A DNA stretch of 64,000 nt from Asterias rubens (lineage: Eukaryota), in assembly GCF_902459465.1 (NCBI RefSeq), contig NC_047062.1, positions 26,412,001-26,476,000 of the forward strand, read 5' to 3'. The position numbers and the translations under genes are program-made. Of this stretch, positions 42,701 to 45,700 are shown piece after piece. A model generated the notes under the pieces. It saw only the letters and a list, made by a program, of their open reading frames with translations. It searched no databases and was not told the DNA's origin. Within the stretch, counting starts at the first letter, position 1. Each line of letters opens with the position of its first letter.

Positions 42701-45700
42701 TTCACAAATTAACACGGTCGGCCGACTGTGTTAACACCCTTCTAATTATGTGCATTTTATAACAAATGGTTTTCAAACGCTTTTCATAGACCAACTGAAC
42801 CGATCCAAGGCAACGTGTCCCTTCCACTTGCATTCAAATTTTTTGCGCATGTTGGTAGCTTGCCACTAACCAGCAGCAGTTACTAACCGCATCTCTGGCC
42901 ATAGAGGGCAGCATTCAAATGAACACAATGAATATTTCAAATATGTCAATACCAAAGCATGACCCTACCTTTAAATGATCTCACTCTAAATATATTATTC
43001 ACAAGATAGGTAGATTTAAGGATATAACAGTGATGTAAGACACCTCTTTAAAGCCTCATTGCAATACAGTACATGTAGCTGTAGCACCCCCAGGCATTCC
43101 GGTGTGTTTATATGAAGACATGCACTATGGGTACTCAGTGTGAGCTCATGTATCATAATCTACCCATACAAGCTTTAATTAATGCATCACAGTAACATGC
43201 ACGTCATCTTCATCACAAAAGAAACAGAGAATAAAGAACAAAAAAGAAACTTGACTAACAGCTTAAAACAAATATTGACTTGAGTTTGCCAATAATCCTC
43301 AACGCTGAGTCTTAACATGGTCAGAAGTACTAAGAAAATTAGGCCAAATAAATAAAATAAAAACATGTTGAGCGTCCTGCCTTTTTTCCAAAAAGGAAGT
43401 AGGACGGCCGTTTTTTGTTTTTTGGGGTTTTTTTTTTAATGGTCGCTTGACAAATTTTTTAAGGCAACCAACTGGCTTATAAAGGTGGGACAGACATGTA
43501 GTTGAGCGTCTACCTCTGCATGCATGAGTCTAGAGCAAACATCAAAATACAAATAAATTATGACTTGTAGCTAGAGTTGTATTATTTACCTCCGAGTTTG
43601 GGATGTCTTATTATGTGCAGCTTATTTTCTTCTCGTAGTTGCGAGTTCTCCTCTTCCAACTGCAAAGAAAATGAAAAAGAGATTTGATAAATTTGTATGA
43701 GTTTCAGTTTATTAATTTGGGTTTTTACCCATACACCGATGTGTGTTAGCACTGTATTCAGTTTCAGTTTGATAAAAAACTAAATGCATTTGAATCAAAT
43801 TGTTATTCTCTCCAAGAAAAAAGAAAGAGGGTTCATAAAATTAAGGTAAATCATCAGTCACAACAAATTGTAAAATCATAAAAAAATAAAATTAAAAAAA
43901 CCATCAGGACACTATGCAAATTATCACAAACTTAATTATTTCAATGTGAAAACAAGATGGATGAAATGAATGAATATTCATTGAACTGAAATCTTACATA
44001 ATGTATGTATTTATACAGATTTGTGAGTAAAAAAAAAACCACCAAGCCTTAATTTAGAGAGTTGGAACTAGAGAGTTATTGGTGTGTTTAAATTAACTTT
44101 GTCGTCACCTTTTTTTATTTGGTACAACATTTAAAAAAGACTTCACCTTATCTTTAAACAGACAAACAATAATACTTGGCAGTAAACATGTTATAGAATG
44201 TTTTTAATCTCAAAGCTCACACATTCATACCCATAACAATCAATTTCAACAAAAAACAATTTCCATCTGAAATACTGTCAAGAAATGAAAACAATAGATT
44301 TTTTTATCTCCAAAAATAAGAAAACTATTGCTTATTATTATTTTCAAAATCACAACAAGCCCACTTATGAACATCCTGCAAACACATAGTGAGTTTCATT
44401 ATATTCAATAAATCATTACCATCAAATGTTATGTAATTGTTCACAGGTTGAATGTAATGTGTTTATTGAAAACTAGAGGATGGGATATCCTTCCTTTTCT
44501 AAAAGTAAGTCTATGATTTCAATAAAAAAATACAAAAAAAGAAAACACAGTTGAAGGTATTTTTCAACATTTATGTCATGTACATTTCATGCAGTAATAA
44601 ACATAACTTGCGTACTATTTTCATAACCCATAATAAGCTGAAATGTATTTTTCCTGAGCTGGCATTCTTATCTACTGTGTCAAAAGAGTTGCTAATAATT
44701 GTTCACTCTTCCTTCAAGGGAAACACAGAGTAAACCAAGCACTACATATTGAGCAAGTTGCTTCCATTCACTACAGACTAACAGGATTAATATCAGTCTC
44801 AGGCAAGGCCCGCGTCACTGACCCTCTATGGCAGCGTACACCCTCTCCCAGAGGCTGGCCATAAAGACTATAGTGCTTTGTGCTATCTGGTTTCCTCCAT
44901 GATGGGGGGGGGGGGTAGTCTTCTTAACGTCATCGTCAGTCATTCATACCACTATAATAATTAGGAATTACCTTGCTCATAACCCCCTCCATTTTGAATG
45001 CATAAAATGGGGGGGGGGGGGGTAGGCCCCCTATTTATTCTGAATAGCAATATGCTGATCATTGTAAACTAGTCAAATATGTGGTGCACATCGGATGTTC
45101 TTGTGTTAATTGTCATCAACATTCCAAGATTCTTCATCATATGTCTTGTGTGTGCAGAGTTTGTGATTAATATTCGAATGAATATTGTATATTGTATGTT
45201 ATAGGCCATGTCAAACTAGGTAATTCACTTTTCTCCTGAAGACGAGTATACTGTTTGAAACGTCAAGACCAAACCGGCTTTTTTTTTTTTTGACACATGG
45301 TTGTACCATCTCCATGGTTGTACCCGCAAGTTTACTATTCATTTAAAGCATGGAGGTAGCTCCATGTTTAAAGTTTCTTCCTATGAGGTAATTAAATGTC
45401 AAAGTAACCTTAAATGTAGAATTTTCACTTGAATTGGATTATAGAAAGACTATTAAATGAAAAGATATATTGTGCTACTAAAGTATTCCTTGTCATTAAT
45501 TGCAGTGTGTTTACTTGCCTCATGTGACCTGGGCCCAATTTCATGGCTCTGCTTACCGTAAGCACAGAATCGGTGCTTACGGAAGCAGGGAATTATGTGC
45601 TTACGACAAGCGTATTTCACGGGTTAGTGGCGAATTTTGGCTTCTGCGTGTGCGTACTCCCCGTTACTAGGCATTCTAGGCTTGCGAGGCTAGCGCAGAA

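What the first reader, a model, noticed from the sequence alone, without database searches (positions are those of the whole stretch)
45342..45373. 18-bp palindromic micro-element CATGGAGGTAGCTCCATG with a perfect 7-bp TSD
The sequence reads TTTAAAG | CATGGAGGTAGCTCCATG | TTTAAAG. The insert consists only of the two termini of the 40806-41486 family, and it is almost the reverse complement of the 20-bp insert at 60932-60951, 15 kb away with a different TSD. The same tiny sequence at unrelated sites with independent TSDs means either a stereotyped excision footprint or one of the smallest mobilisable DNA elements. This is the most novel-looking system in the window.
Basis: partly seen in the sequence, partly recalled or inferred. 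Interest (0 to 1): 0.7.

Follow-up and report, generated by a model that had tools for sequence, protein, structure and literature searches.

The report
Transposon excision scar in starfish DNA
The 18-letter near-palindrome between two copies of TTTAAAG is most likely the scar left when a cut-and-paste jumping gene of the P-element type cut itself out; it is one of well over a thousand such scars in this genome and not a tiny mobile element.

Summary
Window 45342-45373 reads TTTAAAG, the 18-mer, TTTAAAG. The exact 18-mer occurs 14 times in the 417.6-Mb genome (control 0). Eight copies have perfect 7-bp direct repeats and three more match at 6 of 7.

It is not a stereotyped unit. It is one product in a broad series, here 11 letters of one element tip joined to 7 letters of the other. 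Related products (11+8, 11+11, 11+17 and many more) sit at other sites with their own 7-bp duplications. About 1,580 sites fit CATGGAGG, 0-30 letters, CCTCCATG, against 5 in the control.

Retained tips stop at 17 letters, even in a family whose inverted repeat runs to 32. Target duplications follow G-T-w-w-w-A-C. Both features match the P superfamily: the 17-nt staggered cut of the Drosophila P element and the 7-bp GTANTAC target of Galileo.

Two things remain open. The autonomous partner was not found: four P-type transposase families in this genome have other ends. No allele data could be obtained for this site.

Mobility of the 18-mer is unlikely (about 4%). Earlier follow-ups of this scan reached the same reading on other windows of this genome. 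Verdict: a real excision scar, a known kind of thing, of modest interest.

The parts
45342..45348 (.). left copy of the 7-bp target site duplication (TTTAAAG)
45349..45359 (+). 11 letters kept from one tip of the departed element (CATGGAGGTAG)
   Evidence: matches positions 1-11 of the 17-nt tip found about 350-470 times in the genome; the same 11-letter arm is joined to 8, 11 or 17 letters of the other tip at other sites
45360..45366 (-). 7 letters kept from the other tip (CTCCATG on +, CATGGAG read inward)
   Evidence: reverse complement of tip positions 1-7
45367..45373 (.). right copy of the 7-bp target site duplication (TTTAAAG)
45300..45323 (.). second, shorter scar 19 bp upstream: 10 letters (CAT + CTCCATG) between perfect copies of GTTGTAC
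   Evidence: the duplication fits the G-T-w-w-w-A-C target
60925..60958 (-). older scar of the same kind: 20 letters (11 + 1 + 8 with one substitution), duplication 6 of 7
   Evidence: differs by one letter from a 20-mer class seen 5 times
40799..41493 (+). 681-bp non-autonomous element of a related family with 32-bp inverted repeats (right one carries a 13-bp internal loss) and TSD GTAAAAG; shows what an unexcised relative looks like

Best explanation
A cut-and-paste DNA transposon with CATGGAGG tips inserted at TTTAAAG and duplicated those 7 bp (shown by the structure). It later excised (inferred). The transposase cut the transferred strand at the element's end and the other strand about 17 nt inside it. 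Each chromosomal flank therefore kept a 3' single strand of up to 17 tip letters. Host end joining trimmed these to 11 and 7 letters and ligated them. The result is duplication, 18-letter remnant, duplication. The remnant is inert. The cutting geometry and the target preference point to the P superfamily (P element, Galileo, THAP9-like).
For: 1) A series of products, not one unit. With the left arm fixed at 11 letters, the right arm is 7 (14 sites), 8 (22 sites), 11 (13 sites), 17 (about 20 sites) or carries filler. Most have their own 7-bp duplications.
2) Scale. 1,584 sites fit CATGGAGG, 0-30 letters, CCTCCATG, against a control of 5. By total length they split into 1,317 of 16-31 bp, 146 of 32-34 bp and 121 of 35-46 bp.
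3) Arms stop at 17. In the family whose repeat runs to 32 nt, 10 sites have an arm of 15 or more. Five end exactly at 17, one at 17/18, two at 15 and two run longer; P is about 1e-4 for such a pile-up. Forms above 34 bp are often 17 + filler + 17. Recurrent 32-mers equal two 17-nt tips overlapped by their terminal TA.
4) The target logo G-T-w-w-w-A-C is the same for scars and for full MITE copies. It equals Galileo's 7-bp GTANTAC (PMC4168063).
5) A 17-nt stagger is the known peculiarity of P transposase (PMC7776569, PMC10983969).
6) The genome carries multi-copy P-type transposase genes with the full domain set.
Against: No allele carrying the full element at this site was seen. The read-laying run was uninformative because contigs break at a poly-T run at 45259 and repeats swamp the area. 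No transposase gene was tied to CATGGAGG tips: four P-type families have other 5' ends and no P-like coding lies in the loci around the tips. The fall in numbers above 34 bp is a step of two- to four-fold, not a cliff. Part of the 1,584 count is inflated by a 31-bp palindrome that belongs to a larger repeat, and by scars copied along with other repeats.
Confidence: 0.85

Rival explanations
1. Extreme internal deletion by interrupted gap repair. After excision the break was repaired by copying from a sister or homologous copy that still held the element. Synthesis from both ends stopped early and the two short new strands were joined. This is still an excision product, but made by copying rather than by joining the leftover overhangs.
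For: Two of ten sites keep 24-25 letters per arm. One 38-mer keeps about 25 letters of a specific long family. So products longer than 17 per arm exist.
Against: Arms pile up at exactly 17 and are mostly shorter. For an 11+7 product the overhang route is the simpler one. The two routes cannot be told apart for this single site.
Confidence: 0.1
2. The 18-mer is itself a mobilisable micro-element that a transposase cuts out and pastes elsewhere, making a new 7-bp duplication each time.
For: There are 14 identical copies at unrelated sites with independent duplications that follow the family's target preference.
Against: The same holds for dozens of other junction classes of 16-46 bp, each of which would then have to be mobile. 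The arms are unequal and truncated (11 and 7 letters). With a cut 17 nt inside each end, an element shorter than 34 bp cannot be cleaved at both ends. Copy number is low compared with sister classes. The window's 20-mer variant is unique in the genome.
Confidence: 0.04
3. Chance palindrome next to a chance direct repeat.
For: None beyond its small size.
Against: 14 copies against 0 in the control, and 8 of 14 perfect 7-bp repeats (P about 6e-31).
Confidence: 0.01

Closest known systems
Excision footprints of the Drosophila P element
   Same: The target duplication is kept on both sides. The remnant is made of letters from both inverted repeats. At most 17 letters are kept per side, matching the 17-nt 3' extensions left by P transposase (PMC7776569, PMC10983969). 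Products with filler and rarer internally deleted products also occur.
   Different: The duplication is 7 bp, not 8. The tips are CATGGAGG..., not CATGATG.... The scars are fixed in the genome in very large numbers rather than recovered in crosses. The enzyme was not identified here.
Galileo (P superfamily, Drosophila)
   Same: 7-bp target duplications with a palindromic GT...AC consensus (GTANTAC, PMC4168063). Non-autonomous copies are diverse.
   Different: Galileo has very long, internally repetitive inverted repeats. Here the shared tip is 17-32 nt. No sequence relationship was tested.
MITEs (miniature inverted-repeat elements)
   Same: Inverted tips flanked by a target duplication, in many copies. 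True MITEs of this group exist in the window (40806-41486).
   Different: At 18 bp the arms are unequal and cut short, there is no internal sequence, and a continuum of junction variants exists. This is the pattern of repair products, not of a copied master element.
Genome-wide excision footprints described in rice
   Same: A natural, fixed record of DNA transposon excisions with trimmed ends and filler DNA (PMC4423477).
   Different: In rice most events involve deletions, and few tip letters remain. Here long tip remnants make the scars directly recognisable without a second genome.

Membership tests
Transposon excision footprint | Target site duplication retained on both sides of a short remnant | tested here: met
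Transposon excision footprint | Remnant consists of terminal letters of the element's two ends, with or without filler | tested here: met
   11 + 7 letters of the 17-nt tip
Transposon excision footprint | Many different junctions of the same tips at other sites | tested here: met
Transposon excision footprint | Full element and scar found as alternative alleles at one site | tested here: inconclusive
   no read or contig bridges 45259-45759, and repeats dominate
P superfamily DNA transposon | Autonomous copies encode a THAP9-type transposase (THAP, RNase H fold split by a GTP-binding insertion) | tested here: inconclusive
   Such genes exist in several multi-copy families. Four families have other 5' ends and none is linked to CATGGAGG tips
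P superfamily DNA transposon | 7-8 bp target site duplication | tested here: met
   7 bp in scars and in 11 full MITE copies
P superfamily DNA transposon | Donor cleavage staggered by 17 nt | tested here: met
   Indirect, from scars: arms pile up at 17 although the repeat runs to 32 nt; 17+filler+17 forms; 32-mers from a TA overlap
P superfamily DNA transposon | Palindromic GT...AC target as in Galileo | tested here: met
   one search compared with PMC4168063
Mobile micro-element (MITE-like) | Both ends intact enough to be recognised and cleaved | not testable with these tools
   Arms are 11 and 7 letters. With a 17-nt stagger an 18-bp unit could not be cut at both ends (inference)
Mobile micro-element (MITE-like) | One sequence type dominates, with derived variants | tested here: not met
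   Dozens of junction classes, of which the 18-mer is a minor one

The most novel reading that the evidence does not exclude
Scars that keep both 17-nt tips and have captured filler DNA may themselves be mobilised, seeding new non-autonomous families. This would explain why the 17-nt tip is followed by unrelated sequence in about 78 of 100 places, some of them small multi-copy families. It would also leave open that complete 34-bp tip pairs are the smallest substrates of the enzyme.
Probability: 0.08. Interest if true: 0.75.

Novelty: new member of a known kind. Interest (0 to 1): 0.3.

Why it matters
The scars are a natural record of how a P-type enzyme cut DNA in a deuterostome. They suggest that the odd 17-nt stagger known from the fruit-fly P element is an old trait of the superfamily. 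They also show heavy past cut-and-paste turnover: more than a thousand sites where an element came and went. For annotation, tiny CAT...ATG palindromes with 7-bp repeats in this genome should be read as scars, not as new elements or regulatory palindromes.

Tried and rejected
1) Allele test with public reads. The site lies between a poly-T run and a high-copy repeat and nothing bridges it. The one clear joint, a 688-bp skip from 40796 to 41485, shows only that paralogous copies of the host repeat lack the 681-bp element.
2) Finding the autonomous element. A Pfam search gave 10 P-type loci. Their 5' ends were located by where multi-copy homology starts and none starts with CATGGAGG. Metagenome contigs of two families (L079, L080) hold no such tip. 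Three other contigs came without DNA.
3) Footprints of a bona fide P-type family (tip CATAGACT): 4 sites against a control of 2, which is uninformative.
5) The scan of public metagenome contigs for the 17-nt tip gave mostly chance hits, which I did not use. Twelve contigs of one project (JACSE...) carry tips and scars but match this genome only through repeats at about 80-90% identity, so they give no orthologous site.
6) My first idea that CATGGAGGTAGC is the terminus of a sub-family is not excluded, but it was dropped as the main reading once the 28-mers resolved as 11 + 17 letters of the commoner tip.

Full report
What is there. Window 45342-45373 reads TTTAAAG, then the 18-letter near-palindrome given in the finding, then TTTAAAG again. 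The window is part of contig 1 of a 417.6-Mb eukaryotic assembly of 150 contigs. Public runs that hold the stretch include marine metagenomes. Earlier notes of this scan call the organism the common starfish; I did not verify that name.

More than chance. The exact 18-mer occurs 14 times in the genome and never in the reversed control. All 14 sites have different surroundings. Eight have a perfect 7-bp direct repeat at the edges, three have 6 of 7 and three have none. The chance of eight perfect repeats in 14 tries is about 6e-31. The 20-letter insert at 60932-60951 is the reverse complement with two extra letters, and its duplication matches at 6 of 7. That exact 20-mer is unique in the genome. 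It differs by one letter from a 20-mer class seen five times, so it looks like an older, decayed member of that class.

Not one unit but a series. I kept the first 12 letters fixed and allowed 0-12 letters before CTCCATG. This gave 90 strand hits against none in the control: 22 sites of a 19-mer, 5 of a 20-mer, 13 of a perfectly palindromic 22-mer, about 20 of two 28-mers, and some 15 singletons with varied centres. Most of the fetched sites have their own 7-bp duplications, perfect or one letter off.

The 28-mers resolve the structure. They are 11 letters of one tip joined to the full 17 letters of the other tip, and that 17-nt tip occurs about 350-470 times in the genome. On this reading the letter C at position 12 is the first letter of the right arm. 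Right arms that begin with C are exactly those of length 17, 11, 8 and 7, which gives the 28-, 22-, 19- and 18-mers. The finding is therefore the 11 + 7 product.

The version with A at position 12 is nine times commoner, with 3,486 hits.

Scale. CATGGAGG, 0-30 letters, CCTCCATG fits 1,584 sites against 5 in the control. Several groups of tips share the first eight letters and differ after them, and each group has its own short forms built from its own tips.

Two caveats apply to this count. First, a 31-bp palindrome of the CAA group is an internal part of a larger high-copy repeat with conserved flanks and no duplication (window 41560-41600 and 59852); it made up about 15% of the listed sample. 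Second, some scars have been copied along with other repeats, for instance a 34-mer found on several contigs and a 21-mer that sits at the end of a 216-bp unit.

How the enzyme cut. By total length there are 1,317 sites of 16-31 bp, 146 of 32-34 bp and 121 of 35-46 bp. That is roughly 82, 49 and 10 per length class. Many forms above 34 bp are 17 letters, a few filler letters, then 17 letters. Recurrent perfect 32-mers equal two 17-letter tips overlapped by their terminal TA. That is what annealing of two full 3' overhangs would give.

The cleanest test uses the family of the 681-bp element at 40806-41486, whose inverted repeat runs to 32 nt. Ten short forms keep an arm of 15 or more letters. 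Five arms end exactly at 17, one at 17 or 18, two at 15, and two run to 24-25. If arm ends were spread evenly over 15-32, five or more at one given length has P of about 1e-4. So the stop at 17 is not set by the length of the repeat.

A 17-nt stagger is the known peculiarity of P element transposase, which leaves 17-nt 3' extensions (PMC7776569; PMC10983969). The two longer products fit the other known route, interrupted gap repair.

Target choice. Symmetrised logos of perfect duplications give T at position 2 and A at position 6 in 23 of 30 cases for the scars and 17 of 22 for full MITE copies, with G and C favoured at the outer positions. This G-T-w-w-w-A-C pattern with a 7-bp duplication is what is described for Galileo, a member of the P superfamily (GTANTAC; PMC4168063). 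Scars and full copies were thus made by the same kind of insertion.

The enzyme itself. The genome holds P-type transposase genes. Ten loci match the HTH model. Their open frames carry THAP, HTH, RNase H N-terminal, GTP-binding insertion and RNase H C-terminal domains. Copies within families are 90-99.8% identical, so some are young. I could locate the 5' end of four families from the point where multi-copy homology begins, and none starts with CATGGAGG. A search for short forms of one of them gave 4 sites against 2 in the control. No P-like coding sequence lies in the 68 loci around the tips. The partner enzyme of the CATGGAGG group therefore remains unidentified. Assignment to the P superfamily rests on duplication length, target motif and cut geometry.

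Scar or mobile micro-element. Both readings predict duplications and the family's target preference. What separates them is the spread of junction classes, the unequal truncated arms, and the low copy number of the 18-mer relative to sister classes. There is also an inference: an enzyme cutting 17 nt inside each end cannot process an 18-bp unit. I put mobility at about 4%. The single read-laying run showed that no contig or read bridges 45259-45759, and the area is swamped by repeats.

Surroundings. A second scar lies 19 bp upstream: ten letters (CAT plus CTCCATG) between perfect copies of GTTGTAC at 45300-45323. Pairs of scars a few hundred bases apart were also seen elsewhere. The 681-bp element is nested in a high-copy repeat, and reads from other copies of that repeat skip exactly 688 bp, the element plus one duplication.

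Earlier work of this scan. Look-ups after my own analysis showed that several follow-ups on other windows of this genome reached the same reading: P-type excision scars with at most 17 letters per tip. They are not independent evidence. I tested the 17-letter claim myself.

Verdict. This is a real feature and a correct observation. It is explained as an excision scar of a P-like transposon, a new instance of a known kind, with modest interest for this site and somewhat more for the genome-wide record.

Noticed in passing
window 45300-45323: A second, shorter scar: 10 letters (CAT + CTCCATG) between perfect copies of GTTGTAC, 19 bp upstream of the finding. Two insertion-excision cycles within 75 bp suggest a local hot spot.
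   Followed up: partly
genome-wide: The 17-nt tip CATGGAGGTAGAAATAG is followed by unrelated sequence in about 78 of 100 listed places. Some continuations recur (one in 13 places) but most are unique. Either many families share only these 17 letters, or these are half-scars joined to foreign DNA.
   Followed up: no
window 41560-41600 and 59852-59890; L067:698: A 31-bp palindrome with CATGGAGGCAA... arms is an internal part of a larger high-copy repeat with conserved flanks and no target duplication. It inflates naive counts of scars.
   Followed up: partly
window 40743-40805 and 41487-41681: The 681-bp element sits inside another high-copy repeat. Reads from other copies skip exactly 688 bp (element plus one duplication), giving paralogous empty sites.
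   Followed up: partly
genome contig 1, 810733-811096: A tandem array with a 32-bp period in which every unit holds the 12-letter tip. It may be a minisatellite grown from a tip or scar.
   Followed up: no
L069-L080: At least four families of P-type transposase genes with the full domain set. One has copies 99% identical and another has nine or more copies. Their 5' ends differ from the CATGGAGG tips.
   Followed up: partly
L083-L154 (contigs named JACSE...): Twelve contigs of one public metagenome project carry the same 17-nt tip and several scars with 7-bp duplications, yet match this genome only through repeats at about 80-90% identity. They probably come from another sea-star-like host with the same transposon group.
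   Followed up: partly
window 42470-42863, 43652-43848, 45425-45818: Very high read depth (thousands-fold) marks three further high-copy repeats. The first has an inverted internal joint at 42599/42774.
   Followed up: no
L074:501-847: A 347-bp unit present in more than 30 copies, often in pairs about 8 kb apart, interrupts a P-type element. It looks like a solo LTR of a retrotransposon.
   Followed up: no
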